Shown: in pieces, positions 8,311-27,275 of the stretch
Layout of the letters: each line of letters begins with the position of its first letter
How positions within the stretch are numbered: position 1 is the stretch's first letter
IMG/VR virus record: IMGVR_UViG_3300037010_001702
Coordinates: 1-64,000 of that record
Strand: one strand, 5' to 3'
Length of the DNA stretch: 64,000 nt
The notes under the pieces: generated by a model
What the model was told of the DNA's origin: nothing
The model's input: only the letters and a program-made list of their open reading frames with translations
Databases searched by the model: none
Made by a program: the position numbers and the translations under genes

Positions 8311-9060
8311 ATGACATTAACAACATCAGACATTCGCGACCTGTTTAAGGCTCGCTTAGCAGCAAAGCAATTCACGTCAATCAACCGTGAAGCTTCAATG
8401 ACCAACCTGGTTGGCAACACAACCATTGAAATTGTGGGCGCATCTTTTATTGCTGATGAAGATGCTATCTTCGGCGAAGTCAATTGGGATTACGTTGAAC
8501 GCGAAGAAGCTTGGTATAACTCTTTATCCTGTAATGTAAATGATTTTCCTGGCGGTGCCCCCGCCATCTGGAAAGCGGTTGCAGATAAGGACGGCTTTAT
8601 TAACAGCAATTATGGTGCTATTCTTTTTTCTGATTGGAACGGTAATCAATATGAAAACTGTGTAGCAGAACTAAAGTCTAATCCTGGCTCGCGAAGAGCT
8701 ACGGCGATTTACAATCGACCGTCAATGTGGAAAGATTACAATCTAAATGGGCGTAGTGATTTTCTATGCACTAATGCCGTCGGCTATCTTATTAGACAAG
8801 ATGAGCTTCACGCAGTTGTTCAAATGCGCAGTAATGATGCCTGGGCCGGGTATCGAAATGATAGAGCATGGCAGCAGCATATTTTAGAAAAGATGGCCGC
8901 AGAACTCTCTGTTGAGCCTGGTAATCTTTATTGGAATGTAACCTCACTCCATGTTTATGCACGGAATTATTATCTTGTAGATCACTATTCTAAAACTGGT
9001 AAATACCATATTTCTAAAGAAAAATACAAAGAACTTTATCCAGAGTCTGAATATATCTAA
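8311..9060 (+). CDS. 42: dCMP hydroxymethylase (T4 gp42 homologue)
   Basis: TIEIVGASFIADE, INSNYG, NPGSRR, RPSMW.DYN..G.SDFLCTN, MRSND..GYRND.AWQ, SLHVYAR.YYLVDH; colinear with T4 gp42, with the dCMP-specifying Asp. Confidence 0.95.
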   Translation: MTLTTSDIRDLFKARLAAKQFTSINREASMTNLVGNTTIEIVGASFIADEDAIFGEVNWDYVEREEAWYNSLSCNVNDFPGGAPAIWKAVADKDGFINSNYGAILFSDWNGNQYENCVAELKSNPGSRRATAIYNRPSMWKDYNLNGRSDFLCTNAVGYLIRQDELHAVVQMRSNDAWAGYRNDRAWQQHILEKMAAELSVEPGNLYWNVTSLHVYARNYYLVDHYSKTGKYHISKEKYKELYPESEYI

Positions 9061-10864: not shown

Positions 10865-12607
10865 ATGAAATACGAAAAACAAGTTGCTAATGCCTTTGAG
10901 CGGTTAGGATTCGTTCCCCGTGCAGGGCAGATGGATGCCGTTAACCAGGTCTTGGTTGCATTTGTGGATGAGAACATGCAGAATGTTGTCTTGAATGCTT
11001 CTACTGGAACCGGTAAGTCTATCATCGGCGCTGCTGTTGCTGAGGCATTGATTGAGATTCGTGGTGGGTTGGATTCTGCTACTAAGGCTAGTATCTCATT
11101 GACGGCCACAAACGTCCTCGCAAAACAGTATTCCACTACCTTTGAAAAGCTGGGTGGTAATGGCAAGTACATACAGATTAAGGGAGCAGGCAATTACGGT
11201 TGTTCTGCTTTATCTACTGGTGATGAAGAAGAAAATGCAGAAGCTTGCGCATGGTATACGATGGTACAATCTGGTTCTGAGTTTGAAGAAGTAATTAACC
11301 AGCATTGCAATAAGTGTGAGTACCTGAAAGTTAAGAAGCTAAAGAACACTACTCGACATCTTACAACCAACTACTCCTATTTCTTTATTGATCGGATGTA
11401 CACTGGTAAGTTTGAAGACCGCGATCTACTTATCTGGGATGAAGCTCACCTTGTTAATGATCTCTTCTCTGAACATAATGCAATTCACTTCTCACAGAAG
11501 CGAGTACAACAAATGGCTCAGGAAATTGCTGATACAGTTCGCCTAACTGATTTGGAAATCTCTAAAATTCTGACTTCAGTGGCTGCAGACTGTAGCAAGA
11601 AGGATAAGATTAACCAAAGCAACTATGAAGCTTACCTTCGTGCCATGCATAAAGTTTATTCTTATGCTAAGGAACAGGGAACCATTGCTGCTGAAAAAGC
11701 ATTACGCTCAAATCAAAATGGGCAGTACTCCAAGCTGACACGCTTCACGAAGAAGTATGAAGGACTTGCTTGTAAGATTGATGACCTCTTCAACTATAAC
11801 TACGAGCATGTGTTCGAGTATAAGGAAGAAGATAACTCAGTTACGGTGAAGCCTGTATTTGTTGGTTCAATGACAGAAGCTTTGCAGTGCAGTCCGCATA
11901 ATCTCTTTATGTCAGCTACTGTAACCGATCAGTTCATGATTAAGACTTTGCACTTGGATGTTGCGAAGACAAAGTTCATTAAGCTTGAGCCTACATTCCC
12001 TAAAGAGAATAAGGAAGTTGTGTTCTTTGATCCGCTATCTTTGAGTTACACCTCTCTTCAGAATCCCGACACAGTGAAAGCACTTCGAAAGAATGTAGCA
12101 CGGGTAGTTAGAAAGCACATCGACGATAATGAACGTGGTATCATTCTTACGCCATCATTTAAGCTACAAGCCGAATTGGTTGCAGAAATTACTCCTCTTG
12201 CTAGAGCAGGCAGGATGAAATTGTTCGAGCATGTACAGGGCACTAAGCTTGAAGCTACTCTAACAGCATTCAAAGAATATAAGGGAGAACTCCCTGCTAT
12301 TCTTGTATCACCTTCTATGTTTGAAGGTATTGACTTACCTGGAGACCTATCACGGTTTCAGATTTTAGTTAAGGCTCCATTCCCATCTCTGGGTGATAAG
12401 AGAATGAAGTTCATTCTAGACCACCACAAAGACATTTACGAGATAATTACGATCATGAAATGCGTGCAAGGCGCTGGCCGAAGTGTAAGATCGATAGATG
12501 ATCACGCAGTTACATATATCCTAGATTTAAATGGGCAAAGAATTTGGGGATCACCAGCAAACATATGGAAAAACGAATTCAATACCCGATATACTAAATT
12601 CTTATGA
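10865..12607 (+). CDS. DinG/Rad3-family SF2 helicase
   Basis: Q-motif PRAGQ, ASTGTGKS, DEAH, MSAT, EGIDLPGD, PFPS, QGAGRSVRS; Cys cluster. Confidence 0.9.
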   Translation: MKYEKQVANAFERLGFVPRAGQMDAVNQVLVAFVDENMQNVVLNASTGTGKSIIGAAVAEALIEIRGGLDSATKASISLTATNVLAKQYSTTFEKLGGNGKYIQIKGAGNYGCSALSTGDEEENAEACAWYTMVQSGSEFEEVINQHCNKCEYLKVKKLKNTTRHLTTNYSYFFIDRMYTGKFEDRDLLIWDEAHLVNDLFSEHNAIHFSQKRVQQMAQEIADTVRLTDLEISKILTSVAADCSKKDKINQSNYEAYLRAMHKVYSYAKEQGTIAAEKALRSNQNGQYSKLTRFTKKYEGLACKIDDLFNYNYEHVFEYKEEDNSVTVKPVFVGSMTEALQCSPHNLFMSATVTDQFMIKTLHLDVAKTKFIKLEPTFPKENKEVVFFDPLSLSYTSLQNPDTVKALRKNVARVVRKHIDDNERGIILTPSFKLQAELVAEITPLARAGRMKLFEHVQGTKLEATLTAFKEYKGELPAILVSPSMFEGIDLPGDLSRFQILVKAPFPSLGDKRMKFILDHHKDIYEIITIMKCVQGAGRSVRSIDDHAVTYILDLNGQRIWGSPANIWKNEFNTRYTKFL

Positions 12608-12888: not shown

Positions 12889-13203
12889 ATGTCCAAAAAG
12901 TTGAAGTATAAAGAAGACAAGTGTATCTATCGTTTGAACCTCACTCATACTGAAGTTGAACTAATTGCGGCCTTAGTGCAGCAGGTTCGTCTTGGCAGTG
13001 GTGACATCTATAAAGAAGTTGCATTTAATCTGTGCGAGTTATTTGGTAGCACAGAAGACTTTAATTGTTCTGTTTTGGATTCACACATCACTGTTGGATC
13101 TTCCATTGATAAGGGAGGGTATACGACTATTGAAGTCGAGGAAGCTGCATTCCAAGGTATGGGATGCCAAGGTTGCTGCTCAGGATGCAGTTGTGGCGAT
13201 TGA
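12889..13203 (+). CDS. Hypothetical protein with Cys-rich tail
   Basis: AGGAG RBS; upstream TTTACA-N17-TATAAT-like promoter; C-term CQGCCSGCSC. Confidence 0.7.
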   Translation: MSKKLKYKEDKCIYRLNLTHTEVELIAALVQQVRLGSGDIYKEVAFNLCELFGSTEDFNCSVLDSHITVGSSIDKGGYTTIEVEEAAFQGMGCQGCCSGCSCGD

Positions 13204-13257
13204 TAGTTATCATAACCTTCTATAAATTGACCCATCTAAAATAGATAGAGTAAAAGT

Positions 13258-13830
13258 ATGACAATAAATGCTATCCTCGTGGAGGGTTTGGACAGATTGG
13301 GCAAGAGTACATTAGTAGAAAGTATTCAACAAGAGCTCGGATATTTCCAAGTCATTCATTTTGGGAAGCCACAACACTTGAAGTTCTATGAGCAAAAAGA
13401 CAACAATGGATTTGTTTCGACTGGGGAGAGCGCGTATCTTTACCAGCACGCCTCATTCGACAACATGTTCAGAATCCTTAATTCAACAGCAAGAGTTATC
13501 TTTGATCGAGCACATCTCGGAGAATGCGTCTACTCACCAATTTATCGCAACTATTCTGGTGATTACGTGTATGATCTTGAGTGCTATCATGGCATGGATC
13601 ATAATGACTCTACCAAACTCATACTCTTGGTAGAGAATATGTCTATCTCTGAACACTTTGTTGACGATGGTTTATCCTTCGACATTACAAAGCGTCAGCA
13701 AGAGCAAGACCTTTTCGAAGAAGCGTTTCATAAATCAATCATTAAGAACAAACAGATCATCTGTGTAACAGACCCTGCAACGGGCAAGTTCCGCTCTAAA
13801 GAAGACATTCTAAAAGAAGCTTTACAATGA
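13258..13830 (+). CDS. Thymidylate-kinase-like dNMP kinase (candidate hm-dCMP kinase)
   Basis: VEGLDRLGKST P-loop; IFDRAHLGE.VY. Confidence 0.8.
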   Translation: MTINAILVEGLDRLGKSTLVESIQQELGYFQVIHFGKPQHLKFYEQKDNNGFVSTGESAYLYQHASFDNMFRILNSTARVIFDRAHLGECVYSPIYRNYSGDYVYDLECYHGMDHNDSTKLILLVENMSISEHFVDDGLSFDITKRQQEQDLFEEAFHKSIIKNKQIICVTDPATGKFRSKEDILKEALQ

Positions 13831-14438
13831 AATTGAATGAAATTTTACGTGTAGCTTCTTTATCCGATTTAGAATCAAAAATTAAACTCAGCCAAGAACA
13901 GATTAATAATGCTAAAAGTTTAGGCTTTATGGCACATAGTTTTGAAGTGTTTGAAATTAATGGTGAAGTCGGGGGACTGAAAGTATTTTATGCGAAAAAG
14001 GAAGAGAATATTATTGGTCAGTTAGCTCTTGAAAAAACTGAAATTTGCAAAATTAGTGGGTATATCTGTAGACGTTCATATATTATTCCATCAGAAGAAA
14101 AAAAAGGATATGGTTCAGATTTTTATGTCTTCATAAGAAAATATCTCAAGTCACCAATGTTTGCCATGTTCAGTGATGAATCGCAAACACCTGATGGAAT
14201 AAACCTGTGGAAATCTTTAAGCAAAAGATTTGATGTTAAAGTGTTAAACATTCAGACTGGCGAAATAAAATCCCGAAAAGATGTTAATGATGATATAATA
14301 TACACTAATGATGCTGACAAATCAGCAGATTTTATGCTAATGATTGAATCTGCCAAAGCATTTGCTATCCCCACACAGTCGTATATTAAGGGAAGCATCT
14401 TAACACCATATGCATTATTTGAAGATGGAGATTATTAA
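13827..14438 (+). CDS. GNAT-like acetyltransferase with leader
   Basis: EEKKGYGSDFY...FSDESQTPDGINLWKSL; leader MKLNEIL; resembles 9798. Confidence 0.55.
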   Translation: MKLNEILRVASLSDLESKIKLSQEQINNAKSLGFMAHSFEVFEINGEVGGLKVFYAKKEENIIGQLALEKTEICKISGYICRRSYIIPSEEKKGYGSDFYVFIRKYLKSPMFAMFSDESQTPDGINLWKSLSKRFDVKVLNIQTGEIKSRKDVNDDIIYTNDADKSADFMLMIESAKAFAIPTQSYIKGSILTPYALFEDGDY

Positions 14439-15560
14439 ATGAAAGTTGCAGTCATCAAGTTGGGATCGCGTATCTCCTTCAATGCTAATGATACGTCCGG
14501 TGCCAATGGAGAAGCTAGAAGCATCTGTAAGATGCTTAAAGGTGGAGGAGCCGAGGTTCATATCTACACGAAGATTCTTAAGAAAGATAAACTAGTAGAA
14601 GATTACCAGTGGCATGATCTGTCTGAGCATATTCTTGACCACCCCACAGAAGATATTCTTGTTATTCTGAATGGTAATGTTAACTTCTTTGGTGGTGCTG
14701 AAGATCGCGAACAGCTTTTGAACTATGCAATCATCAATGCATTTGAAGGCCCTATCTTTTATGTATACTGCGACCCTGAACTTACATTGAAGCAAGTATG
14801 GCCATCAGTTGCTAAGAAGCCATGGGCTGGCAATTGGTCTCAAGGCACACTTGATATCGTTCGTAAGGACATCAATTATCTGTGTCAGCCCTTCGACACT
14901 GAGATGATTCGAAATGATCTGAAGAAGCATGAAATCATTCCACAGAATATCATTCATTTCCCGTTCGAACAGTTTCCCTGTTTGAATGAACGGCTCCCAT
15001 TCAACCCAGCTCCAGAAGTTGATCTATCTTACGGCGGAACAATGCGGGGCGGTAAGCGTGTTAAGAAGATGGCTAAGTTTTACTTTGGTCATCCAGATGA
15101 AATCTCTGTAGAGATGTTTGGTAAGATTGAAGCTAAAGACTTTGAAGACAAATATGTTATGGGTCTACGCCATCCTACTTACACTGGTCCAGTTAAATAC
15201 GATGACATGCTTCCTAAGATGAATAAAGCAATGGCGCATTGTGTTATCGGAGATCCTTATTACGAGAAGATTAATGACATTCCGCAGCGCTTGTGGGAGA
15301 GCGTTAATTCCAATGTGGTTACGTTTATTGATTATGAAATGGATAAAATGCGTAGAGTGTGGGCAGCAGATAAAGTGCTAGGCGATTTTCTTTATGTAAA
15401 AGATAGACAAGAACTTTCTGAGAAAATACTATTACTAAAGTCTGATAATGAACTTCGCAAGCAAATACTGTCAGATCAGTTTACAGCACTTAACTTTAAT
15501 CCTGAAGAATATTGCGCATCATTTGTCAATCTGATTAAAAGCAATATCAGAATCCCGTAA
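14439..15560 (+). CDS. bgt: DNA beta-glucosyltransferase homologue (GT-B, acts on hmC)
   Basis: NVNFFGG, YCD (catalytic Asp position), QVWPSV.KKPWA, FPFEQ, YGGTMRGGKR, IGD..Y, RLWE; colinear with T4 BGT. Confidence 0.9.
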   Translation: MKVAVIKLGSRISFNANDTSGANGEARSICKMLKGGGAEVHIYTKILKKDKLVEDYQWHDLSEHILDHPTEDILVILNGNVNFFGGAEDREQLLNYAIINAFEGPIFYVYCDPELTLKQVWPSVAKKPWAGNWSQGTLDIVRKDINYLCQPFDTEMIRNDLKKHEIIPQNIIHFPFEQFPCLNERLPFNPAPEVDLSYGGTMRGGKRVKKMAKFYFGHPDEISVEMFGKIEAKDFEDKYVMGLRHPTYTGPVKYDDMLPKMNKAMAHCVIGDPYYEKINDIPQRLWESVNSNVVTFIDYEMDKMRRVWAADKVLGDFLYVKDRQELSEKILLLKSDNELRKQILSDQFTALNFNPEEYCASFVNLIKSNIRIP

Positions 15561-15581
15561 ATAAAGCGAGCCCGGAAAATT

Positions 15582-15785
15582 ATGGTAGTGCATTTAAAGG
15601 TTGGCGTTTATTGTGGATTTATGGAAATCTATACTGATGATAGAATATTTGCTACAAATATTATGGGTGTAGATTGCACTGTAGATAGAGATAAGATGTG
15701 TGTAGAATTTCCCTCTCTAGGTTATTCAAAGCGTATTATTGAAGATACAGGGTTCTCGATATTATTTGAAGCAATAAAATTGTGA
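15582..15785 (+). CDS. Hypothetical protein
   Basis: ORF after TAAATA at 15558. Confidence 0.4.
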   Translation: MVVHLKVGVYCGFMEIYTDDRIFATNIMGVDCTVDRDKMCVEFPSLGYSKRIIEDTGFSILFEAIKL

Positions 15786-15804
15786 TACTCTTAAAGGTAG
15801 TATA

Positions 15805-15990
15805 ATGGAACTTATCAGCAAAACCACTGTAATAGATGATGTGACATATGAACCTATTCACACACTAACATTTAAAGTTAGTCAAACTCTCCTTGATGAT
15901 TTAGCTCTCATCAAGGAGATGTATGGAGCGAATGAGGCAGCTACTATTATTGGGACCGAGCTTTTAGAACAAATTCTTAAGAGGAAATAA
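15805..15990 (+). CDS. Hypothetical protein
   Basis: ORF coupled to next gene. Confidence 0.55.
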   Translation: MELISKTTVIDDVTYEPIHTLTFKVSQTLLDDLALIKEMYGANEAATIIGTELLEQILKRK

Positions 15991-15991
15991 A

Positions 15992-17902
15992 ATGAACATT
16001 GTTATCTTAGCTGGTGGCACCGGCAGTATTGCTATCCAGACAGCGCTCTATAACTCTCTAGAACAAATCGGGGATAAAGGAGATGTTGATATAAAAATCC
16101 TAGTGAATGCATATGATGCAGGTTTGAGTACTGGTGCCGTTAGACGAGTAATGAATGGTGACATCCTTGGTCCATCTGATGTTCGTAAGAACCAGACCAC
16201 ACGGCTTAAGCTTGAGCATCCTGTATCTCCGTGGCATAAATTTCTTGACATTCGATTCTCAAAACCTGCGACCGAAGTAGAAGCATTCTGTATTCAGCAG
16301 ATTAATACACTTCAAAAGGAACTAGAAGATTATGAACTTCCATCTAATCTTAGTGTTATTGACAAGGCGGTCGGGTCTTACTTCAATGCGCCACTTGCTA
16401 CTAAGATTGACTACTATGATTTCTCTTTAGCGAATATTATCTATGCAGGCCTTGCTCGCATGCATAAGAACTCTCTTCGTGCTGCAGCTCGTGAGATGGC
16501 AAAATTGCTTGGTATCAAAGACAATGTTCTATTGAATGATGACACCTCTTTGTTCCTTGGGGCTATTACTAAGTCTGGTATCCGCGTGACAGATGAGGGA
16601 GATATTGTTTCATGGGGAAGAATGGACGATCCATTCGTAGACATCTTTTTTACTGATTCAAGAGGTAATGAATCGAAACCAGTGTTGTGCAATGAAGCTC
16701 ACCATGCAATTATGGATGCTGATCTGATTATCCTTTCATCTGGAACACAATGGTCATCATTGATTCCTACTTATGCATCTTCTGGATTTAAATCAGCCAT
16801 TGACCAGTGCAATGCGAAGTTGCTAATGGTTATGAATCGAATTCCTGATAAGGATTCTCCTGGCCAGTCTGCATCTGACATCATCAACATTCTTGTGCCA
16901 AACTATTTCCCAGCAGGTCGCTTGCATGTTCTATGTGATAATACTGCTCATGAACTTATGCAGGGTTCTAACATTGACTTCAATATCCAATCTACTGTAG
17001 CAGGCATTTATAGCTATGACTTGTCTGATTCCGAATCCAACAAGCATAGTCCTAGAGCTCTAGCAAAGTCTATTGCATCCATTTACTGGAACATCGAATC
17101 AAGTAGCCAAGTGCAGAACACCACATACGTTTTTGATTATGATGACACCCTTGTTGGTCGTGGTAATGCATACAAGAGAGCATCACAATACAATGTCAAT
17201 GGGTTAAGCGCACTAAACGAAAAGATTAATGTTGCTGTCTGCACTGGTAACGGTATCAAAGCTGTCAAACTAACCCGCAAAGCTGAAATCATGGGCAATG
17301 GTTTGACGCCAATGAGATTTGATAAACCTATGCTGCGAGTATTTGCAGATGGTGGTATTAATGAATATGCTTACAGCACTAACTGCGAAGACAGCAATGA
17401 TGGAGTTTGTGCTCTTGCAATGAAACATCTTGATCCTTCTAAAGTGCTAAGCAAAACAGAACTGTCATTAGTCATGATGCGATTGAAGGAAGCAGGAATT
17501 CCTGTTGCTAAAATTGAAAATCGTGGAGACACTGTCATTGCCATCAAACCGATTGATGCTGAGTACCGTGACTCGATTACACGATTACTTGAACTTACCT
17601 TCCTTTCTCAGAATGGAAATGAAAAGAACTCATGGGCTATTACACCTTCAGGTAGAACGACTATTGAAATTTCTAAATCTGGAATCTCGAAAGCTCGTGC
17701 TATTGAGGAATTGCTAGCATCAACATTTGAACCAATTGTATTCATCGGTGACGAGCTTGATTACGGAAATGACTTCTGTATTAAAGAACTCGCACAGAAG
17801 AATATTCAGCTGTCCTGTTTGAAAGTGCGATCACCTATTCACACCGCATGGCTGATCAACACGCTACTTGATAACTTACAAGTTATAATGTTTAATAAAT
17901 GA
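15992..17902 (+). CDS. CofD/YvcK(UPF0052)-family domain fused to HAD-IIB phosphatase/phosphomutase
   Basis: N: IVILAGGTGS, NAYDAGLSTG, GPSDVR, ADLIILSSGT..SSLIP; C: FDYDDTL, CTGN, GRTTIEI..SGISK, FIGDELDYGND. Confidence 0.85.
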   Translation: MNIVILAGGTGSIAIQTALYNSLEQIGDKGDVDIKILVNAYDAGLSTGAVRRVMNGDILGPSDVRKNQTTRLKLEHPVSPWHKFLDIRFSKPATEVEAFCIQQINTLQKELEDYELPSNLSVIDKAVGSYFNAPLATKIDYYDFSLANIIYAGLARMHKNSLRAAAREMAKLLGIKDNVLLNDDTSLFLGAITKSGIRVTDEGDIVSWGRMDDPFVDIFFTDSRGNESKPVLCNEAHHAIMDADLIILSSGTQWSSLIPTYASSGFKSAIDQCNAKLLMVMNRIPDKDSPGQSASDIINILVPNYFPAGRLHVLCDNTAHELMQGSNIDFNIQSTVAGIYSYDLSDSESNKHSPRALAKSIASIYWNIESSSQVQNTTYVFDYDDTLVGRGNAYKRASQYNVNGLSALNEKINVAVCTGNGIKAVKLTRKAEIMGNGLTPMRFDKPMLRVFADGGINEYAYSTNCEDSNDGVCALAMKHLDPSKVLSKTELSLVMMRLKEAGIPVAKIENRGDTVIAIKPIDAEYRDSITRLLELTFLSQNGNEKNSWAITPSGRTTIEISKSGISKARAIEELLASTFEPIVFIGDELDYGNDFCIKELAQKNIQLSCLKVRSPIHTAWLINTLLDNLQVIMFNK

Positions 17903-18717
17903 AACAAGACCTCTATATTATTGCTGCAGGTAAAGGCTCTCGAATGGGAGGGAGCCTTCCTAAAGCATTAGTTCCAATTAATGGTACAGAACCATGTTTA
18001 ACAACAACTCTAAAGCAGATTGGAAATAAATTTCTAAATGTATTCTTAGTTGTTAATACTGACATCATTGAGATTTGGGAAAAGTATCTCCGCACGCAAG
18101 TTGATTATACCGAGTATCCACTTGACTATGCAAGGAATGTTACCCTAGTCCCCATTAAATCAGGATTGGGCGATGGCCATGCTGTTATGTCTGCATTAGA
18201 ATCAGTTGTTGCAGAATTAGGCAAGACGAAATCAACACCTAAGTTCTCAGATGACATCGTTGTTTGCTGGGGTGATGTATTCTTTCCCCATGCAGAACTT
18301 ATCGATGAGTTGCTATCTAGACCACTAAAGAATGGATTGTTCCCTGTTGTTAGAGAAGATAATCCTTACGTGACCTTGCTTACGAATTCTGATATGCAAT
18401 GCATATCAGCAGATTTTTCTAAGTATGGTGAGAACCATCCTACTGGATTCCATGATCAATCCATTTTTAGATTCAATAGAAATCTATTGAGCCAAACCCT
18501 TTATACTCTTCATGACGCCTACTGGAAGAATGGTCGCTATATGACACCTGGTGGTGAGCTCTCACTGCTTCACACCTTCCATTATTTGTATAACACAGAA
18601 TCACCCGCATCTGTTTATGAAACAGATTACCCAACGCTAAGCTTCAATACACCTGAAGAAGTAGCAGATATTCAAAAGGAAATTAACAAAAAATGGCAGA
18701 ACAATCAGTCCTCGTGA
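17899..18717 (+). CDS. Sugar-phosphate nucleotidyltransferase (GlmU/RmlA-like NTP transferase)
   Basis: IIAAGKGSRMGGSLPKALVPING, GLGDGHAV, VCWGDV, SFNTPEE. Confidence 0.85.
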   Translation: MKQDLYIIAAGKGSRMGGSLPKALVPINGTEPCLTTTLKQIGNKFLNVFLVVNTDIIEIWEKYLRTQVDYTEYPLDYARNVTLVPIKSGLGDGHAVMSALESVVAELGKTKSTPKFSDDIVVCWGDVFFPHAELIDELLSRPLKNGLFPVVREDNPYVTLLTNSDMQCISADFSKYGENHPTGFHDQSIFRFNRNLLSQTLYTLHDAYWKNGRYMTPGGELSLLHTFHYLYNTESPASVYETDYPTLSFNTPEEVADIQKEINKKWQNNQSS

Positions 18718-19355
18718 CCCTTACTGCACCATCATGCAGTGGAAAGAGTCACCTTTTAAACTACATTCGCAATGAGCAAAAGCTTCCATGCATAGTGTCA
18801 ACTACAACTAGACCTCCTCGCCCAGGTGAAGTTGACGGCGTTGACTACTTCTTTATCTCTGAAGAACAATCAAAAGACATTGAGGCAGCAGATGGGTTCG
18901 CAGAGCTTGCTATCTATAATGGTGTACGCTATGGTGTTACTAAATCGGAATTCAAGACGAAGCTTGATACGGGTTTAACATTCCTAATCGTTGAACCTTC
19001 TGGTATTGACCATTATGTAAAGCCAGCTCTCGATGCTGGGGCAATACATCTAAAATACTTCATCACTGTTCCACAAACAGTTCGTCTTGAACGATTCAAA
19101 AAACGGCTAGATGCCGATCTGGCTGAGGTTATGGATCGTCACACCCCCACCATTGAGGATGAACTTAATAAGAAGAAACAAATTCAATCATGTGTTGAAA
19201 TGGGGTTGAAACGATATAAAGCCATGCTGACTGTTGAACCGGGATGGATTGACTTAGTGGCATGGGACGGAGTATTGTCAGGATTAGATTCGCCAAATCA
19301 TAACATGTCAGTAATCCTTGGTAAGATTCAGCAAATGAATCTGAATAGCAACTGA
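18693..19355 (+). CDS. gmk: Guanylate kinase
   Basis: APSCSGKS, VSTTTRPPRPGEVDGVDYFF, YG. Confidence 0.85.
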   Translation: MAEQSVLVTLTAPSCSGKSHLLNYIRNEQKLPCIVSTTTRPPRPGEVDGVDYFFISEEQSKDIEAADGFAELAIYNGVRYGVTKSEFKTKLDTGLTFLIVEPSGIDHYVKPALDAGAIHLKYFITVPQTVRLERFKKRLDADLAEVMDRHTPTIEDELNKKKQIQSCVEMGLKRYKAMLTVEPGWIDLVAWDGVLSGLDSPNHNMSVILGKIQQMNLNSN

Positions 19356-19389
19356 ACGGATCGAGATTAACTACAAAGTAAATACCTTT

Positions 19390-19836
19390 ATGAAAATTAC
19401 AGACAACACTCCTATGAGCGAAACTACTCCTACTTTCTGGCCCGCCGATATTGAAGATATGCACACCAAGTTTGGTGTTAACAAGGTCGTCGATACTCTT
19501 ACTAATGAACAACTCAAAACTTATCTTAAGTTCCGCTTGGATATGGTTCAAGAAGAAGTTACAGAAGCCCATGCTGCTTTTGAAGCAGCAGATGCTGATG
19601 GAATTGTTGATGCATTAATCGACGACATCGTCTTTGTAATCGGAACTCTTAATGTATTGGGTGTCGATGCTTATAAAGCATGGAACATTGTCCATGCAAA
19701 GAACATGGAAAAGTCTCCAGGTGTTAAAGAAGGTCGTCCTAACCCTTACGGATTCCCTGACTTGATTAAGCCGGCTGGATGGACCGCTCCTTCTCACCTT
19801 GACAACCTCGGCTTGCTTAGCAAGATTTTCAAATGA
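19390..19836 (+). CDS. MazG/PRA-PH-like dNTP pyrophosphohydrolase (candidate dCTPase/dUTPase)
   Basis: QEEVTE...DALID...NMEK...GRPNP.G.PDLIKP.GW.AP. Confidence 0.75.
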   Translation: MKITDNTPMSETTPTFWPADIEDMHTKFGVNKVVDTLTNEQLKTYLKFRLDMVQEEVTEAHAAFEAADADGIVDALIDDIVFVIGTLNVLGVDAYKAWNIVHAKNMEKSPGVKEGRPNPYGFPDLIKPAGWTAPSHLDNLGLLSKIFK

Positions 19837-20021
19837 AACAGATTAAATCTGTAGAATACGTTTACAATGGCAAAGAAGCTATTGTGACATACACTGATGG
19901 AACTAGACGAGTAGTTGCATCTGCAGCTGAACTCAATGAAGTTCAAGAAAACATTAATGTGCAGCAACAACGGCAAATCTTGATTGAGAAACCTCACCTT
20001 GCTGCAGGTAAACCAGTTTGA
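19833..20021 (+). CDS. Hypothetical protein
   Basis: Coupled ORF. Confidence 0.55.
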   Translation: MKQIKSVEYVYNGKEAIVTYTDGTRRVVASAAELNEVQENINVQQQRQILIEKPHLAAGKPV

Positions 20022-20668: not shown

Positions 20669-21643
20669 ATGAAACTACTTGTACTTGCAAACGCGCACCA
20701 TGAACTTATCAAGGAAGCTACGGTTGGAACTGCCAGCGTAGCCCTAGCCATGGAGAAGATGATCAAGTTTATCCAACGAAAGATGGATGAAAAGCTCATC
20801 AGGATTCCTGGAATTGAGCATTTTCACAATTCCACTGACAGCGGGTATGGTATTCGCTATGTATTTTCAGGTACAACGCGCTGTCTTCGCTTCAACTGGG
20901 GTTCTGAAGCTTCAGCTGGTAAGACTAGTGAGATTCACTCCATCGACATCTTCAATGGTAAGTCTGCTGATCCAACGTTCAGCATTCACTGCAAGGGTAT
21001 TTCCTTCGCGCAATCACTGCCAGCTCTTGTAGCAATTCTTCATTCTCCAACAATTGGTCATGTTCGTGCCTTCCCAGTTAGCCCTGTTGAAGCTTTGTCT
21101 GAGTCAGTTATCATGGAAGTTGCGCGGGATGCATTCTCGCCTGAAGCTGCTCTCAATGACTTCCTCGGAAAACTCGCAGCAGGCAAGACATTCACCCGTT
21201 CTGAATTCATTGGTTCCTACCACATTATCAATGCCGGTATCTTTGACACAGTCTTCAGGGACTTCAATGACAGGTTTCAAATTGATGCCAGGAGAGTTTC
21301 GCTAAAGCCAGGTTCGAAGATCGACTCTCTTAAGGACTCTATTCTTTCAAAGGCAGGAGTCATCACTGTAACCCAAGGTGGTACAGATGAATCCTTCATG
21401 AAGACCAAGCAGGAAGAGCAAGTTGAAAAGGATACCGCTGAACGCATTCCATTTGGTGACACCCTTGAACACTTGGAAGGTCTCGTAACAGGTACCATAA
21501 AGGGGGCATTCAACGCTCTCTTTGTTGCTGGTAAGGGTGGATCGTTTTCAGGTTCAACTCTTGTAAATGTTATGGTTAATAATTCATCAATAAATTTAAA
21601 TGATAATCATCAAACCGAAAACAAGATTGCCAATCATAATTAA
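20669..21643 (+). CDS. AAA-ATPase N-terminal half (291-aa N-extein) plus 33-aa N-intein
   Basis: Ends NALFVAGKGG|SFSGSTLVNVMV...; TAAATA at 20628. Confidence 0.8.
   Translation: MKLLVLANAHHELIKEATVGTASVALAMEKMIKFIQRKMDEKLIRIPGIEHFHNSTDSGYGIRYVFSGTTRCLRFNWGSEASAGKTSEIHSIDIFNGKSADPTFSIHCKGISFAQSLPALVAILHSPTIGHVRAFPVSPVEALSESVIMEVARDAFSPEAALNDFLGKLAAGKTFTRSEFIGSYHIINAGIFDTVFRDFNDRFQIDARRVSLKPGSKIDSLKDSILSKAGVITVTQGGTDESFMKTKQEEQVEKDTAERIPFGDTLEHLEGLVTGTIKGAFNALFVAGKGGSFSGSTLVNVMVNNSSINLNDNHQTENKIANHN
21542..21640 (+). mobile_element. Split intein N-fragment (Ser1)
   Basis: SFSGSTLVNV matches intein block A (C/S-F-x-G-x-T-x-V), directly after half a Walker A motif. Confidence 0.75.
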
Positions 21644-22655
21644 AACGATAGAAGAAATTATTCCTCATCTTAAACGAGTATCAAAAAGCTGGCGATCTTT
21701 AACACCACAAGTTAAAGATAGCCTTTTATCACTTCTTTCAAGAAATCCAATTTATTCAGGAATGAATCTATTTCATCTAGACTTACGTAAAGATGTTTTA
21801 CACATGCGATCCGGGACATTTTCTAGTGATCAGTATAAAAATATATTTGGATGGAGTGAAGAAGAAATAAGTTCATTAATAAAAAGTAAGGATAATATAA
21901 TAAAAAATTCTTCTGGAGGTTTAACTCCGTGTATGAAAGAATTTTGGATTAAACATCACGGATTATCTGAAAAAGATGCTATTAAAAAAGTATCAGAAAT
22001 CCAAACTAAACTAAGTAAAAGAAAAAAGAAAACTGTTTTTAACAATCCAATTTCTTTACAATATTATTTGCAAAGGGGTATTAATAAAGATGAAGCAATT
22101 AGGGCACAAAGTGAAGTTCAAAAGAAAAGAAGAAATAACTGTATCGAGTATTGGTTAAACAAGGGATATTCAAAGGAATATGCGAAAAAGGAAATATCTA
22201 ATTTACAAAAACTTAGAAGTAAATTAAGTATAGAATATTGGTTACACAGAGGATACACATTAGAACAAGCACAAAAAGAAGCCTATCTTGCACAAAAAGC
22301 TCAGATGCCATCAAAAGTTTCAAAAATATCCAAAAAATTTTTTACCGAATTATTATTAGAGCTTAAAAAATATGGTTATTTAGAAAATGAATTCAAGTAT
22401 GGTGATAACGAAGAATGCATTTATATTAGTTCAAAAAGACGCATATATTTAGATTTTTATCATCAATTAACTAAGAAGGTAATAGAATTTGATGGAAAAT
22501 ATTGGCATTCTGAAAAAACCATAGAAGATGAAAAAAGAGATAAAATGCTAAAAGAATTAGGTTATTCGGTTTTAAGAATTCCAGAAACATATGATAATGA
22601 ACTTTGGAATAAATATCTTATTCAGGCTGTTGAATTCATCGTAAAGGAAAATTAA
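21600..22655 (+). CDS. Free-standing endonuclease (Vsr/DUF559-like) inserted between the intein halves
   Basis: LDFY...VIEFDGKYWH...DEKRDKMLKELGYSVLRI; four [EQ]-[YF]-[WY]-[LI]-x-x-G...A...Q repeats; AT-rich. Confidence 0.8.
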   Translation: MIIIKPKTRLPIIIKTIEEIIPHLKRVSKSWRSLTPQVKDSLLSLLSRNPIYSGMNLFHLDLRKDVLHMRSGTFSSDQYKNIFGWSEEEISSLIKSKDNIIKNSSGGLTPCMKEFWIKHHGLSEKDAIKKVSEIQTKLSKRKKKTVFNNPISLQYYLQRGINKDEAIRAQSEVQKKRRNNCIEYWLNKGYSKEYAKKEISNLQKLRSKLSIEYWLHRGYTLEQAQKEAYLAQKAQMPSKVSKISKKFFTELLLELKKYGYLENEFKYGDNEECIYISSKRRIYLDFYHQLTKKVIEFDGKYWHSEKTIEDEKRDKMLKELGYSVLRIPETYDNELWNKYLIQAVEFIVKEN

Positions 22656-23764: not shown

Positions 23765-24595
23765 ATGGAAAAGAAATATGTAAGAGCATCAAACAGAAAA
23801 CATCACATAGTTTATAAAACGACATGTATAGAAACAAATGCATTCTATATAGGCATGCACAGCACTGATAATCTAAATGATGGTTATCTGGGAAGTGGGG
23901 TTAGGCTTAGAAAATCGATTAGAAAATATGGTGAAGCTGCACATAAGACTGAAATCTTATTCGAATTAGAAAATAGACAGGCTGCATCAGATAAAGAAAG
24001 AGAACTTATTACTGCTGAACTAAGAAAGGATCCAAAGTGTATGAACTGCGGACCTGGTGGTGAAGGCTATTATGATAGACCAGCTACTAAAGAAGAAACG
24101 TCAGCTAAACTTTCTAAAGCTTCTAAGCAATATGTTCGCACTAAAGAGTGGTATGAAAAAGTAGTAGCTACTCGAAAAGCAAACAACAGTTATACTCATA
24201 CCCCAGAAGCAAGAGAAAAGATTAGAGCTTCTCTAACCGGTAAAACTTTAACTGAAGAGCACAAGAAGAAAATATCAGAAGGTGGTACTGGGCAGAAGAG
24301 AACAGAAGAAACATGTTTGAATATCTCTAAGTCTCTAAAGGGAAAGAAGTTTAAATCTGGGGTAGATAGAAAACCTGTATCAGAAGAAGCTAAAGAGAAT
24401 ATTAGACAAGATCGCATTGGTAAAAAGCACTCTGAAGAAGCCAAATCTAATATGCGAAAACCTCATAAAAAGCCAAAAACCCGCCAATGTACTGTAGATG
24501 GTATAAATATCTATCAATCAGTAAGTCAAATGGTTAAAGCTTTAGGTTCTGGTCAAAATAGTCGGAGATCACCAAATTTTAGGTGCATAATATGA
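23765..24595 (+). CDS. Seg-like GIY-YIG homing endonuclease with NUMOD3 repeats
   Basis: IVYKTT...FYIGMHST.NLNDGYLGSG; HTPEAREKI, TEEHKKKIS, HSEEAKSNM. Confidence 0.9.
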   Translation: MEKKYVRASNRKHHIVYKTTCIETNAFYIGMHSTDNLNDGYLGSGVRLRKSIRKYGEAAHKTEILFELENRQAASDKERELITAELRKDPKCMNCGPGGEGYYDRPATKEETSAKLSKASKQYVRTKEWYEKVVATRKANNSYTHTPEAREKIRASLTGKTLTEEHKKKISEGGTGQKRTEETCLNISKSLKGKKFKSGVDRKPVSEEAKENIRQDRIGKKHSEEAKSNMRKPHKKPKTRQCTVDGINIYQSVSQMVKALGSGQNSRRSPNFRCII

Positions 24596-26642: not shown

Positions 26643-27275
26643 ATGTTTCAAAATCAAGAAACCTTTCTGCCTGGTATGCGGCGACATACCTTCAAGCCCA
26701 AGACAGTTTTCCACCGGGTTGCTACCTTCACCTTCGAAGAAGGTATGTATGTTATCAACCACATCAAACAGAAGAATCTCCATGGTGTTGAAGTTGAGGG
26801 TATCACTGATCCGCAATCTACTCGCATCCGTATGATCGCAAATGGTCAAACTGCTTGCGTTAAATGCGGCCTGAAAGGTAATCACTTCTACATTGAACGC
26901 CACAAGAAAGATTTGGCTAGCAAGTACAGTCTCAATCTGTATGCTCTCACAGAAGATGGTTTTGAAGTCATGATGACGTGGGATCACATCATCCCTAAGT
27001 CTCTAGGTGGTTCAAACCGGCTGTGGAATGCTCAGTGCATGTGTCAAAAGTGCAATGCTGCTAAAGGCAATTATCTGAGTTTGGCTGAGCTGGTTGAGAT
27101 TGGCAGTCATAAGAATGCTCACCTCATGTATAGCTTGCCGCAAATACAACTTAACAAGGACAACGGAATTACACGTACTTTGAAAGATGTTCGTGAGATG
27201 AACCAGAAATGGGAAAATACTCAAGCTGTGCCAGTGTTTAAGAAAGCTGACCTAACGGAAACTGCAAATGTCTAA
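26643..27275 (+). CDS. HNH endonuclease-domain protein
   Basis: CVKCG...TWDHIIPKSLGGSN...NAQCMCQKCNAAKG. Confidence 0.85.
   Translation: MFQNQETFLPGMRRHTFKPKTVFHRVATFTFEEGMYVINHIKQKNLHGVEVEGITDPQSTRIRMIANGQTACVKCGLKGNHFYIERHKKDLASKYSLNLYALTEDGFEVMMTWDHIIPKSLGGSNRLWNAQCMCQKCNAAKGNYLSLAELVEIGSHKNAHLMYSLPQIQLNKDNGITRTLKDVREMNQKWENTQAVPVFKKADLTETANV

What the first reader, a model, noticed from the sequence alone, without database searches (positions are those of the whole stretch)
15992..17902. CofD/YvcK-HAD two-domain fusion in a phage
Seen: about 370 aa of CofD/UPF0052 motifs (GGTG, DxGxSTG, PSDVR) in frame with a complete HAD-IIB domain (DxDxT, T, K, GDxxxxGND). Known: synthase-phosphatase fusions (as in trehalose- and sucrose-phosphate pathways) make a phosphorylated product and then dephosphorylate it. 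Inference: the fusion may make a small glycoside or phosphodiester metabolite. It could also redirect host UDP-GlcNAc/cell-wall precursor flux, as GlmR does.
Basis: partly seen in the sequence, partly recalled or inferred. Interest (0 to 1): 0.65.

Follow-up and report, generated by a model that had tools for sequence, protein, structure and literature searches.

The report
Phage sugar-activation enzyme for DNA glycosylation
A jumbo phage carries a real, uncharacterised two-domain enzyme (CofD/YvcK-like plus a sugar-phosphate HAD domain) that sits, with a nucleotidyltransferase, beside a T4-type DNA glucosyltransferase, so it most likely helps make the activated sugar used to decorate the phage's hydroxymethylcytosine DNA.

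Summary
Window 15992-17902 (+) is one 636-aa ORF. Its N half is CofD/UPF0052 (Pfam 1.5e-19) and its C half is a complete HAD-IIB domain. All catalytic motifs are invariant in 74 homologues, and the AlphaFold2 model is confident (pLDDT 91.7). The fold is closest to YvcK/GlmR for the N half. The C half ties between trehalose-6-P phosphatase and PMM/alpha-phosphoglucomutase.

The gene belongs to a conserved cassette. An IspD/GlmU-type nucleotidyltransferase lies within 300 b in 37 of 42 distinct loci, and all three domains are fused in one 895-aa protein. A T4 beta-glucosyltransferase homologue lies within 3 kb upstream in 32 of 42 loci. In the window the cassette sits among hmC genes: a dCMP-hydroxymethylase-like ThyA paralogue, a dNMP kinase, a guanylate kinase and a MazG-like protein. 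Elsewhere the same pair travels with a TET-associated glycosyltransferase or with bacterial GT1, GT2 and GT8 genes. The GT partner changed at least three times on the tree.

Best reading (about 0.5): a portable nucleotide-sugar supply cassette for the adjacent glycosyltransferase. Main rival (about 0.2): F420-like CofC/CofD chemistry that adds a phosphodiester-linked sugar. The family is common in metagenomes, it is unannotated in Ralstonia phage RsoM2USA, and I found no paper on it.

The parts
15992..17902 (+). Fusion gene, 636 aa: CofD/YvcK-like domain plus HAD-IIB domain
   Evidence: ORF. Pfam CofD 1.5e-19 and Hydrolase_3. AF2 pLDDT 91.7. 74-member alignment A1 with invariant catalytic motifs.
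15992..17104 (+). N half (aa 1-371): CofD/UPF0052-superfamily domain, closest to YvcK/GlmR, with a ~50-aa helical insert (aa ~92-142) absent from YvcK
   Evidence: PDB profile hits to 2ppv, 2q7x, 2hzb and 2o2z at E 7e-19 to 6e-13. They align aa 1-91 and 143-300 and skip 92-142. Foldseek TM(target) is 0.73-0.83 to YvcK structures and ~0.6 to FbiA/CofD. Invariant residues include G8 G9 T10 G11, N39, D42, S46, G48, R51, P61 S62 D63 R65 K66 N67.
17105..17899 (+). C half (aa 372-636): HAD-IIB domain of the T6PP / PMM / alpha-PGM branch, catalytically intact
   Evidence: Motifs I-IV are invariant. Domain model pLDDT 92.9. VIA-align Z: 17.5 to T6PP 6upb, 17.5 to alpha-PGM 4bnd, 16.3 to PMM 6i5x. Profile against PDB: 4bnd 1.1e-6.
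15979..15985 (+). Shine-Dalgarno-like AAGAGGA, 6 nt before the ATG
   Evidence: Read directly from the sequence.
17899..18717 (+). IspD/TarI/GlmU-N-type nucleotidyltransferase (272 aa). Its start overlaps the fusion's stop (ATGA).
   Evidence: Pfam NTP_transf_3 2e-9. NCBIfam IspD 5.7e-8 and GlmU 6.5e-7. PDB: TarI-like 3f1c 9e-5. A homologue lies within 300 b of the fusion in 37 of 42 loci. It is fused to the CofD-HAD protein in P0081.
14439..15560 (+). T4-type DNA beta-glucosyltransferase homologue (373 aa)
   Evidence: phrog_7922 8.6e-51. T4 BGT 1bgt at E 5e-35 over aa 67-353. Arg, Arg, Arg and Glu are conserved in the two segments I take, from memory of the T4 structure, to hold R191, R195, R269 and E272. 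A homologue lies within 3 kb upstream of the fusion in 32 of 42 loci.
8311..9060 (+). Divergent ThyA paralogue, candidate dCMP hydroxymethylase
   Evidence: Pfam Thymidylat_synt 53.9 bits. phrog_160 2e-47. Cys153 with Asp184 at C+31 (Y-R-N-D-R-A-W). A canonical ThyA (335 bits) is also present at 43698-44621.
13258..13830 (+). dNMP/thymidylate-kinase-like protein
   Evidence: phrog_761 5.5e-10. Syntenic in the nearer phage clade.
18693..19355 (+). Guanylate kinase
   Evidence: TIGR03263 1.6e-22. phrog_1815 6.7e-29. It directly follows the nucleotidyltransferase in the nearer clade.
19390..19836 (+). MazG-like NTP pyrophosphohydrolase (candidate dCTPase)
   Evidence: Pfam PRA-PH 1.1e-8. phrog_671 1.6e-20.

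Best explanation
The fusion is one half of a portable two-gene cassette, the other half being the adjacent nucleotidyltransferase. The cassette turns a common host sugar phosphate into a nucleotide-activated sugar for the glycosyltransferase encoded beside it. In this phage that transferase is a T4-type beta-glucosyltransferase, so the product would be used to glycosylate 5-hydroxymethylcytosine in the phage DNA.

Proposed steps, all inferred:
1. The HAD-IIB domain (T6PP/PMM/alpha-PGM branch) binds a hexose phosphate or bisphosphate and yields the sugar 1-phosphate. It does this either as a PMM-type mutase or by removing the distal phosphate of a bisphosphate.
2. The CofD/YvcK-like domain performs a nucleotide-dependent phosphoryl or nucleotidyl transfer on the same sugar phosphate. 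It either forms the bisphosphate that the HAD domain needs, or acts as a GlmR-type accessory sugar-1-P nucleotidyltransferase.
3. The IspD/GlmU-type enzyme forms the NDP-sugar.
4. The glycosyltransferase puts the sugar on hmC.

What is shown: the domain identities, intact catalytic motifs, tight gene linkage, a natural triple fusion, the hmC context, and exchange of the GT partner. What is inferred: the substrates, the order of steps and the exact reaction of the CofD-like domain.
For: Domain identities and intact motifs.

Linkage: the nucleotidyltransferase lies within 300 b in 37 of 42 distinct loci and the T4-bGT homologue within 3 kb upstream in 32 of 42. Genes overlap in T4-like phages L054-L059. 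The stop and start overlap in the window. P0081 fuses CofD-HAD-NTP_transf_3 in one 895-aa protein.

hmC context in the window: bGT, ThyA paralogue with Asp at the base-specifying position, dNMP kinase, guanylate kinase and MazG.

Portability: the same pair sits with GT1 (L007, L010), with GT2/GT4/GT8 plus an ABC-2 exporter in an Oscillospiraceae polysaccharide cluster (L012), with GT2 (L060), with GT8, and with a TET-associated glycosyltransferase in a viral contig (L038). The tree needs at least 3 changes of GT partner. The GT1-context proteins nest inside the window's own phage clade with 98-100% support.

HAD exclusivity: in a word search that sees only close relatives, the HAD half recovered nothing but fragments or split genes of this same fusion.

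Precedents: phage DNA arabinosylation uses a kinase/nucleotidyltransferase plus a HAD phosphatase to make its NDP-sugar (PMC13326640). GlmR/YvcK is reported to be a sugar-1-P uridylyltransferase (PMC10128056; PMC13046274). PMM-type HADs need a hexose 1,6-bisphosphate cofactor (PMC8808168).
Against: No substrate, product or activity was measured. The CofD-like domain has no assigned step that follows from known family chemistry unless it duplicates the nucleotidyltransferase or does a kinase-like reaction not known for this fold. A mutase plus a nucleotidyltransferase would suffice for a common NDP-hexose, yet the CofD-like half is the better conserved half (52% against 39% mean column identity). 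The nucleotidyltransferase's nearest solved relatives are alditol-phosphate cytidylyltransferases (TarI/IspD), whereas the bGT homologue appears to keep T4's UDP-contacting residues (residue numbers are from my memory of the T4 structure). That could mean the two do not share a nucleotide. Portability among GT families does not strictly exclude action on the sugar that the GT installs.
Confidence: 0.5

Rival explanations
1. F420-like CofC/CofD logic applied to DNA. The HAD domain acts as a mutase (sugar-6-P to sugar-1-P) and the nucleotidyltransferase makes the NDP-sugar. The CofD-like domain then transfers sugar-1-phosphate, releasing NMP, onto a hydroxyl of the glucose that the bGT put on hmC, or onto hmC itself. 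The result would be a phosphodiester-bridged hypermodification. In bacteria the same enzyme would add phospho-sugar side groups to glycans.
For: This reading uses each domain's canonical family chemistry exactly once. A CofD-superfamily domain adjacent to a MobA/IspD-clan nucleotidyltransferase mirrors the CofC/CofD pair. Both metal-binding Asp positions (D42, D63) are conserved. The family-specific helical insert, rich in invariant aromatic residues (F131, Y141, F144, Y151), could form an acceptor site. Guanylate kinase next door would recycle released GMP. The bGT homologue appears to keep UDP contacts and could use host UDP-glucose on its own. The L012 cluster has an ABC-2 exporter, as teichoic-acid-like and phosphodiester-containing polymers do.
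Against: The domain is closer to YvcK/GlmR than to CofD/FbiA: TM 0.8 against 0.6, and sequence hits go only to the YvcK group. The protein is acidic (pI 5.5; CofD half median 5.3). It is about 49% identical between DNA-modifying phages and a bacterial GT1 context and nests among them in the tree. That is easier to explain with a soluble substrate than with macromolecular acceptors as different as DNA and glycans. To my knowledge no phosphodiester-linked hmC adduct is known.
Confidence: 0.2
2. The CofD-like domain joins an NDP-activated group to a phosphorylated small acceptor and the HAD domain removes that phosphate. This would give a free small glycoside or phosphodiester metabolite, as in the trehalose, sucrose, mannosylglycerate or di-myo-inositol-phosphate pathways.
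For: The HAD fold ties with trehalose-6-P phosphatase (Z 17.5). 21 of 74 members touch the Trehalose_PPase model. Transferase-then-HAD-IIB is a recurrent fusion order (established knowledge). An NTP-transferase plus phospho-alcohol transferase plus phosphatase is the logic of di-myo-inositol-phosphate synthesis, and the IPCT structure 2xme appears weakly among the nucleotidyltransferase hits (E 0.16).
Against: This model gives no role to the glycosyltransferase that accompanies the pair in most loci where flanks are available. It does not explain placement inside hmC nucleotide-metabolism genes. Motif IV (long G-D-x4-G-N-D loop) and the C-terminal V..P..T are of the PMM/alpha-PGM type rather than the T6PP type.
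Confidence: 0.08
3. A GlmR-like regulator or hijacker. The YvcK-like domain binds a UDP-sugar and modulates host hexosamine or cell-wall precursor flux, with the HAD domain as an accessory phosphatase.
For: The nearest solved and sequence relatives are YvcK/GlmR proteins. GlmR binds UDP-GlcNAc and affects GlmS (PMC7525490 abstract; PMC13046274).
Against: The score against the YvcK model TIGR01826 is 64.5 bits against a cut-off of 196. The C-terminal third, where GlmR's UDP-GlcNAc residue R301 lies, is not alignable by sequence: the Pfam match ends at profile position 235 of 290. None of the neighbours matched a yvcJ- or whiA-type family in the family scans. Dense invariant polar residues in both halves, the obligate nucleotidyltransferase partner and the triple fusion argue for an enzyme pathway.
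Confidence: 0.07

Closest known systems
YvcK/GlmR (UPF0052; PDB 2ppv, 2o2z/2hzb, 2q7x), reported accessory GlcNAc-1-P uridylyltransferase and UDP-GlcNAc-binding protein of Firmicutes
   Same: Same fold (TM to target 0.73-0.83). Same N-terminal G-G-T-G loop, D-x-G-x-S-T-G and P-x-D-[VI]-R-x-N motifs. The first catalytic Asp is kept as D42.
   Different: About 20% identity. The score is far below the family cut-off (64.5 against 196 bits). There is a ~50-aa helical insert at aa 92-142. The second Asp of the 'DD' pair is N or A. The C-terminal third is not alignable. The domain is fused to a HAD domain. It is partnered with a nucleotidyltransferase and a glycosyltransferase, not with yvcJ/whiA.
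CofD/FbiA (LPPG or EPPG : Fo phospho-transferase of F420 synthesis; PDB 3c3d/3c3e, 6uw1-6uw7) with its partner CofC/FbiD
   Same: Same superfamily (Pfam PF01933, E 1.5e-19). It sits next to a nucleotidyltransferase, so the two-step logic 'activate with NTP, then transfer with loss of NMP' is available.
   Different: More distant in fold (TM about 0.6, Foldseek E 1e-8). No sequence-level PDB hit. No CofD equivalog hit. None of the neighbours scanned matched an F420 family. The partner is IspD/GlmU-like rather than CofC.
HAD-IIB sugar-phosphate enzymes: L. lactis alpha-phosphoglucomutase (4bnd), eukaryotic-type phosphomannomutases (2amy, 2fue, 7myv, 6i5x) and trehalose-6-phosphate phosphatases (6upb, 1u02)
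   Same: All four HAD motifs and the C2B cap fold (Z 16-17.5). The long motif IV loop G-D-x4-G-N-D and the C-terminal V..P..T are shared with alpha-PGM/PMM.
   Different: 15-21% identity. In the word search the HAD half recovered only fragments or split genes of this same fusion. Whether it is a mutase or a phosphatase is not resolved.
Phage pathways that make their own NDP-sugar for DNA glycosylation (arabinosyl-5-hydroxy/hydroxymethyl-cytosine: AfhE kinase/nucleotidyltransferase, AfhF HAD phosphatase; RB69, DLP3, HY126), and T4 hmC beta-glucosylation
   Same: The same kind of system: a pyrimidine-modifying ThyA paralogue, a DNA glycosyltransferase, a HAD enzyme and a nucleotidyltransferase encoded together (PMC13326640).
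   Different: There is no kinase or isomerase. A CofD/YvcK-fold domain stands in their place. The HAD is type IIB, PMM/T6PP-like, rather than the GmhB-like fold the paper matches for AfhF's homologues. T4 itself relies on host UDP-glucose (own knowledge).

Membership tests
CofD/UPF0052 superfamily (Pfam PF01933) | Match to the family HMM above the gathering score | tested here: met
   70.8 bits against a cut-off of 30, E 1.5e-19, aa 3-301. The same holds in the RsoM2USA and LR756500 homologues.
CofD/UPF0052 superfamily (Pfam PF01933) | Fold and N-terminal glycine loop plus the two conserved Asp motifs | tested here: met
   Foldseek TM(target) 0.73-0.83 to UPF0052 structures. G8-G11, D42 and D63 are invariant or at least 90% conserved.
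CofD proper (F420 LPPG:Fo 2-phospho-L-lactate transferase) | Equivalog-level sequence match and F420 gene context (cofC/E/G/H) | tested here: not met
   No CofD equivalog appears among the NCBIfam hits. No CofD/FbiA chain appears in the PDB sequence search. Neighbours are a bGT, an IspD/GlmU-like transferase and nucleotide kinases.
YvcK/GlmR (TIGR01826) | Score above the curated cut-off | tested here: not met
   64.5 bits against a cut-off of 196.
YvcK/GlmR (TIGR01826) | Catalytic Asp-Asp pair (D38 D39 in B. subtilis) and UDP-GlcNAc-binding R301 | tested here: inconclusive
   The first Asp aligns with invariant D42. The second position is A in the window and N in the consensus, as in the S. 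epidermidis structure 2ppv (residues from PMC13046274). The segment holding R301 is not aligned by any sequence method used.
YvcK/GlmR (TIGR01826) | yvcJ-glmR-whiA operon context | tested here: not met
   No neighbour in the window matched such a family in the scans.
HAD superfamily, subclass IIB | Motifs I (DxDxT), II (S/T), III (K) and IV (GDxxxND-type), all present | tested here: met
   D382, D384, T386, T418, K567, G586-D587...N593-D594, invariant in 74 sequences.
HAD superfamily, subclass IIB | C2B alpha/beta cap between motifs II and III; family HMM | tested here: met
   Z 12-17.5 to T6PP, alpha-PGM, PMM, Cof-type, SPP and MPGP structures over ~200-220 aligned residues. Hydrolase_3 scores 27.3 bits against 20.9 for the domain, and 67 of 74 members match. 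TIGR01484 is below its cut-off (29.3 against 41.8).
PMM / alpha-PGM clade of HAD-IIB (phosphohexomutases) | Clade-specific sequence signature and best profile match | tested here: inconclusive
   The best PDB profile hit is alpha-PGM 4bnd at 1.1e-6, then PMM at 1.5e-3. The motif IV loop and C-terminal V..P..T are shared. However only 13 of 74 members touch Pfam PMM (21 touch T6PP), and the fold ties with T6PP. Mutase activity is not testable here.
Phage hmC DNA glycosylation module (T4 type) | DNA beta-glucosyltransferase homologue beside the gene | tested here: met
   E 5e-35 to T4 BGT over aa 67-353. phrog_7922 8.6e-51.
Phage hmC DNA glycosylation module (T4 type) | dCMP hydroxymethylase (ThyA paralogue with Asp at the base-specifying position) and dCTP exclusion | tested here: inconclusive
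   The ThyA paralogue at 8311-9060 has Cys153 and Asp184 at C+31. The equivalence to T4 gp42 Asp179 rests on my memory of the T4 numbering. The MazG-like protein is only a candidate dCTPase. The actual base in virion DNA is not testable here.

The most novel reading that the evidence does not exclude
The CofD-fold domain is a new kind of sugar-phosphate transferase acting in DNA hypermodification. One version: it transfers a sugar-1-phosphate from an NDP-sugar onto glucosyl-hmC, giving a phosphodiester-bridged disaccharide on phage DNA (a teichoic-acid-like decoration of DNA). The other version: it is the first CofD/YvcK-fold enzyme that phosphorylates a sugar phosphate with an NDP or NTP to feed a PMM-like HAD. 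Either version would give the long-puzzling YvcK/UPF0052 branch a defined catalytic chemistry and would add a new hmC adduct or a new route to nucleotide sugars.
Probability: 0.25. Interest if true: 0.85.

Novelty: new variant of a known kind. Interest (0 to 1): 0.62.

Why it matters
Phage DNA hypermodifications decide which restriction, CRISPR and glycosylase defences work against a phage, and they supply enzymes for epigenomic tools. This work points to a three-gene cassette: a DNA glycosyltransferase, a CofD/YvcK-HAD fusion and a nucleotidyltransferase. The cassette is widespread in jumbo and T4-like phage metagenomes, is present in one cultured phage (RsoM2USA), and is unannotated. It also occurs with TET-associated and bacterial polysaccharide glycosyltransferases. 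It gives a tractable system in which to assign a reaction to the CofD/YvcK (UPF0052) fold, whose only reported activities are F420 phospholactate transfer and the recently reported GlmR uridylyltransferase. If the product is more than plain glucosyl-hmC, it is a new DNA modification.

Tried and rejected
Nucleotide search: megablast of window 13000-20000 against 50,697 phage records found nothing. tblastn found only two full-length phage hits plus one weak partial hit.

PHROGs has no family for the fusion or for the nucleotidyltransferase.

HAD half searched alone: only fragments or split copies of the same fusion came back, with no named stand-alone relative. CofD half searched alone, trimmed to 340 aa to exclude the long fusions: still only shorter fusions of 544-595 aa. 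No stand-alone sister family could therefore be used to infer function.

The genome-contig scan gave only 4 loci because it depends on two peptide patterns.

Fold comparison of the HAD half could not separate phosphatase from mutase; Z ties at 17.5.

Isoelectric points were examined as a hint for DNA binding. The fusion is at 5.5, but the bGT homologue is at 5.9, so this is uninformative.

Complex prediction for the fusion with the nucleotidyltransferase returned no answer (score 0.00, below the mark). It is not evidence either way.

Literature searches for CofD with phage, DNA modification, TAGT or JBP found no description. The RsoM2USA paper does not annotate the gene and reports no DNA-modification test.

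I considered and rejected 'F420 biosynthesis gene in a phage': there is no CofD equivalog match and none of the neighbours scanned matched an F420 family.

The large representative-protein search was not run. The reads tools were not used.
Full report
**1. The observation**

Window 15992-17902 (+) is a single 636-aa ORF. An AGAGGA Shine-Dalgarno-like site lies six bases before its ATG, and its stop overlaps the start of the next gene as ATGA.

Pfam places CofD (PF01933) on aa 3-301 at E 1.5e-19, 70.8 bits against a cut-off of 30. It places the HAD-IIB model Hydrolase_3 on the C half, above its cut-off. NCBIfam adds weak hits, all below their cut-offs, to the YvcK subfamily, HAD-SF-IIB and Cof-type hydrolases.

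In an alignment of 74 full-length homologues of 44-84% identity (A1) these residues are invariant:
- G8 G9 T10 G11, N39, Y41, D42, S46, G48, R51 and P61 S62 D63 R65 K66 N67 in the N half;
- D382, D384, T386, R390, G419, N420, K567, G586 D587 E588, G592 N593 D594 and T618 in the C half.

The catalytic positions stay invariant or at least 90% conserved in a wider set down to 27% identity (A4). AlphaFold2 gives a confident two-domain model with pLDDT 91.7 and pTM 0.91.

The window is phage. It is part of an 88-kb IMG/VR record judged 24% complete, which implies a genome of roughly 370 kb. It encodes tail-fibre-like proteins and T4-type topoisomerase II.

**2. What the two halves are**

*N half.* A profile of the family hits only the UPF0052/YvcK structures by sequence (2ppv 6.6e-19, 2q7x, 2hzb, 2o2z, 2p0y). 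The alignment skips aa ~92-142, a family-specific helical insert. By fold, the YvcK structures come first (TM to target 0.73-0.83, E 1e-17 to 1e-15). FbiA and CofD follow at TM about 0.6 and E about 1e-8. The score against the YvcK model is far below its cut-off (64.5 against 196 bits) and no CofD equivalog matches. The domain is therefore a separate branch of the CofD/UPF0052 superfamily, nearer to YvcK/GlmR than to CofD.

GlmR is reported to be a GlcNAc-1-P uridylyltransferase that needs two consecutive aspartates (PMC10128056; PMC13046274). The first of these aligns with invariant D42. The second position is A or N here, as it is in the staphylococcal structure 2ppv.

*C half.* The closest solved sequence is the Lactococcus alpha-phosphoglucomutase 4bnd (1.1e-6), then phosphomannomutases (1.5e-3 to 0.07), then a trehalose-6-P phosphatase (0.05). 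The long motif IV loop and a C-terminal V..P..T are shared with alpha-PGM and PMM. Scanned member by member, 67 of 74 match Hydrolase_3, 21 match Trehalose_PPase and 13 match PMM.

Folded alone (pLDDT 92.9), the domain ties between T6PP 6upb and alpha-PGM 4bnd at Z 17.5. T6PP-related 1u02 (16.5) and PMM 6i5x (16.3) follow. Cof-type, sucrose-phosphate and mannosyl-phosphoglycerate phosphatases score 12-15.

HAD-IIB membership is met. The sub-branch is the sugar-phosphate T6PP/PMM group. Whether it hydrolyses or shifts a phosphate is not resolved.

**3. Surroundings in the window**

All the following genes are on the + strand:
- 8311-9060: a divergent ThyA paralogue (Pfam 53.9 bits, phrog_160 2e-47). 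It has Cys153 and an Asp 31 residues later, in Y-R-N-D-R-A-W. From my memory of T4 gp42 (C148, D179), Asp at this position marks dCMP hydroxymethylases, whereas thymidylate synthase has Asn there.
- 43698-44621: a canonical ThyA (335 bits), so thymine is probably kept.
- 10865-12607: a helicase.
- 13258-13830: a dNMP-kinase-like protein.
- 14439-15560: a T4 beta-glucosyltransferase homologue (phrog_7922 8.6e-51; E 5e-35 to 1bgt over nearly its whole length). The Arg, Arg, Arg and Glu that I recall as T4's UDP contacts R191, R195, R269 and E272 appear conserved in the printed alignment.
- 15992-17902: the fusion.
- 17899-18717: a nucleotidyltransferase (NTP_transf_3 2e-9; IspD 5.7e-8; GlmU 6.5e-7; nearest solved TarI-like 3f1c at 9e-5).
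- 18693-19355: guanylate kinase.
- 19390-19836: a MazG-like pyrophosphohydrolase.

This is the gene content of a T4-style hmC pathway, plus the fusion and a nucleotidyltransferase.

**4. Relatives elsewhere**

Among deposited phages, only Ralstonia jumbo phage RsoM2USA (38.6% identity, gene 1, 'hypothetical protein') and an uncultured 462-kb phage (31%) have the full-length fusion. In RsoM2USA the bGT homologue is the gene directly upstream. A weak NTP_transf_3 match (E 1.2e-3, below the Pfam cut-off) lies directly downstream across the ends of the linear record.

In metagenomes the architecture is common. One search gave 387 clusters at E <= 1e-3, of which the 120 listed were nearly all full length, many on 300-370-kb contigs. 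A second search recovered a further clade of 544-595-aa fusions, several with a precomputed PMM hit. The HAD half searched alone finds only fragments or split copies of the same gene. As far as the word search can see, the two halves occur only together.

I examined 42 distinct loci. A nucleotidyltransferase homologue lies within 300 b of the fusion in 37, and a T4-bGT homologue lies within 3 kb upstream in 32. In T4-like phages (L054-L059) the three genes overlap end to end, beside ribonucleotide reductase, ThyA-like or ThyX genes. One protein, P0081 (895 aa), fuses CofD-like, HAD and NTP_transf_3 in that order.

**5. The pair changes glycosyltransferase partner**

Loci without a T4-bGT homologue carry other glycosyltransferases next to the pair:
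- an EryCIII-like GT1 in a Steroidobacteraceae MAG and beside the triple fusion (L010, L007);
- GT4, GT2, GT8, a CMP-sugar synthetase and an ABC-2 exporter in an Oscillospiraceae polysaccharide cluster (L012);
- GT2 (L060);
- GT8;
- in viral contig L038, a TET-associated glycosyltransferase (PF20691, 8.9e-26);
- viral contig L041 has a C5-cytosine methylase upstream. In the TET route a C5-methyltransferase makes 5mC, TET oxidises it to 5hmC, and glycosyltransferases then act (PMC8256090).

A maximum-likelihood tree of 31 fusions needs at least three changes of GT partner. The two GT1-context proteins nest inside the window's own jumbo-phage clade (98/98 and 100/100 support). The TAGT-context protein is sister to a bGT-context one (99/96).

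**6. How it most likely works**

The shown facts are as follows. Both domains are intact enzymes. They are inseparable from each other and nearly inseparable from an IspD/GlmU-type nucleotidyltransferase. The trio accompanies one Leloir-type glycosyltransferase whose family varies. In phages that transferase is one that acts on hmC DNA.

The simplest account is that the pair is a portable supply line for the nucleotide sugar that the neighbouring transferase consumes (confidence about 0.5). Polysaccharide loci commonly carry their own manB/manC- or galF-type supply genes (own knowledge). Phages that arabinosylate their cytosines encode a kinase/nucleotidyltransferase and a HAD phosphatase for the same purpose (PMC13326640).

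By rough estimate (own inference), a genome of about 370 kb with every cytosine glycosylated needs on the order of 10^5 sugar donors per copy. That would make a private supply useful.

Within this model the HAD domain delivers the sugar 1-phosphate, as a mutase or as a bisphosphate phosphatase. PMM-type enzymes need a hexose 1,6-bisphosphate (PMC8808168). The CofD/YvcK-like domain carries out a nucleotide-dependent transfer on the same sugar phosphate, either forming that bisphosphate or acting like GlmR. These last assignments are inference.

**7. Rivals**

*(a) F420-like CofC/CofD logic (0.2).* The NDP-sugar made by the HAD mutase and the nucleotidyltransferase is used by the CofD-like domain to transfer sugar-1-phosphate onto the glucose on hmC, with loss of NMP. 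This uses each family's canonical chemistry once. It explains why the CofD-like half is the more conserved (52% against 39% mean column identity). It would also fit the guanylate kinase next door. Against it: the YvcK-like rather than CofD-like affinity, the acidic protein, and about 49% identity between DNA-context and bacterial GT1-context members.

*(c) A GlmR-like regulator of host UDP-GlcNAc flux (0.07).* The YvcK cut-off, the operon context and the R301 region are not met or not alignable. The obligate enzyme partners argue for a pathway.

**8. Comparison with the known, and novelty**

It works like the known phage systems that build an activated sugar and glycosylate a modified pyrimidine. 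It is not a member of CofD proper or of YvcK/GlmR by their curated thresholds. Its HAD half is a new clade of HAD-IIB.

I found no paper that mentions the fusion. The RsoM2USA paper lists the bGT and the two ThyA-type genes but not this gene, and reports no test of DNA modification.

I rate it a new variant of a known kind. The architecture is common but uncharacterised. A cultured phage makes it directly testable.

**9. Limits**

No substrate or product is known. The AlphaFold2 coordinates could not be inspected, so pocket geometry and the domain interface were not examined. Residue equivalences to T4 gp42, T4 BGT numbering and PMM2 rest partly on memory and are marked as such. The complex prediction for the fusion with the nucleotidyltransferase gave no verdict. 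The large representative search and the reads tools were not used.

Noticed in passing
window 8311-9060 (+) and 43698-44621 (+): The window has two ThyA-family genes. One is a divergent paralogue with Asp at the base-specifying position (candidate dCMP hydroxymethylase). The other is a canonical thymidylate synthase (335 bits). Together they suggest the phage replaces C but keeps T.
   Followed up: partly
L007:2494-5181 (protein P0081, 895 aa): A natural triple fusion, CofD-like + HAD + NTP_transf_3, lies beside an EryCIII-like GT1, an aldose-epimerase fragment and IS66 transposase pieces on a 6.6-kb metagenome contig.
   Followed up: partly
L038:7247-8218 and L041:5768-6979: In two viral contigs without a T4-bGT homologue, the fusion/nucleotidyltransferase pair sits near a TET-associated glycosyltransferase (PF20691, 8.9e-26) or a C5-cytosine DNA methylase (7e-76). 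This links the cassette to the post-replicative 5mC/TET route to hmC as well.
   Followed up: partly
window 21600-22655, 23765-24595, 26643-27275 (+): Three homing-endonuclease-like ORFs lie just downstream of the modification block: DUF559 with a weak HNH match, NUMOD3/phrog_314, and HNH_5.
   Followed up: no
window 42506-43168 and 43134-43670 (+): A DnaJ-like protein and a circularly permuted YpsA SLOG-family protein (PF12694, 7e-31) lie directly upstream of the canonical ThyA.
   Followed up: no
window 2189-6247 (-), 52577-56284 (+), 56297-58891 (+): Three very large proteins (1352, 1235 and 864 aa) share the same set of PHROG matches (phrog_27782, 2647, 16867, 11518; tail-fibre, head-decoration and structural). 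This suggests a repeated domain shared among paralogous fibre-like proteins.
   Followed up: no
window 13827-14438, 15582-15785, 15805-15990 (+): A 203-aa ORF with no family match lies between the dNMP-kinase-like gene and the bGT gene. Two small ORFs (67 and 61 aa) lie between the bGT and the fusion. tblastn found them only in the identical records L015 and L016, not in other relatives.
   Followed up: partly
L009 and L052 (upstream of the cassette): Some related jumbo-phage contigs carry PrkA, DUF444 and SpoVR homologues and a nucleoside 2-deoxyribosyltransferase just upstream of the bGT/fusion block.
   Followed up: no
L052:6930-8918 and L053:679-2580: In two contigs the fusion is called as separate CofD-like and HAD genes. 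I did not determine whether these are real splits or frameshift or assembly errors.
   Followed up: no
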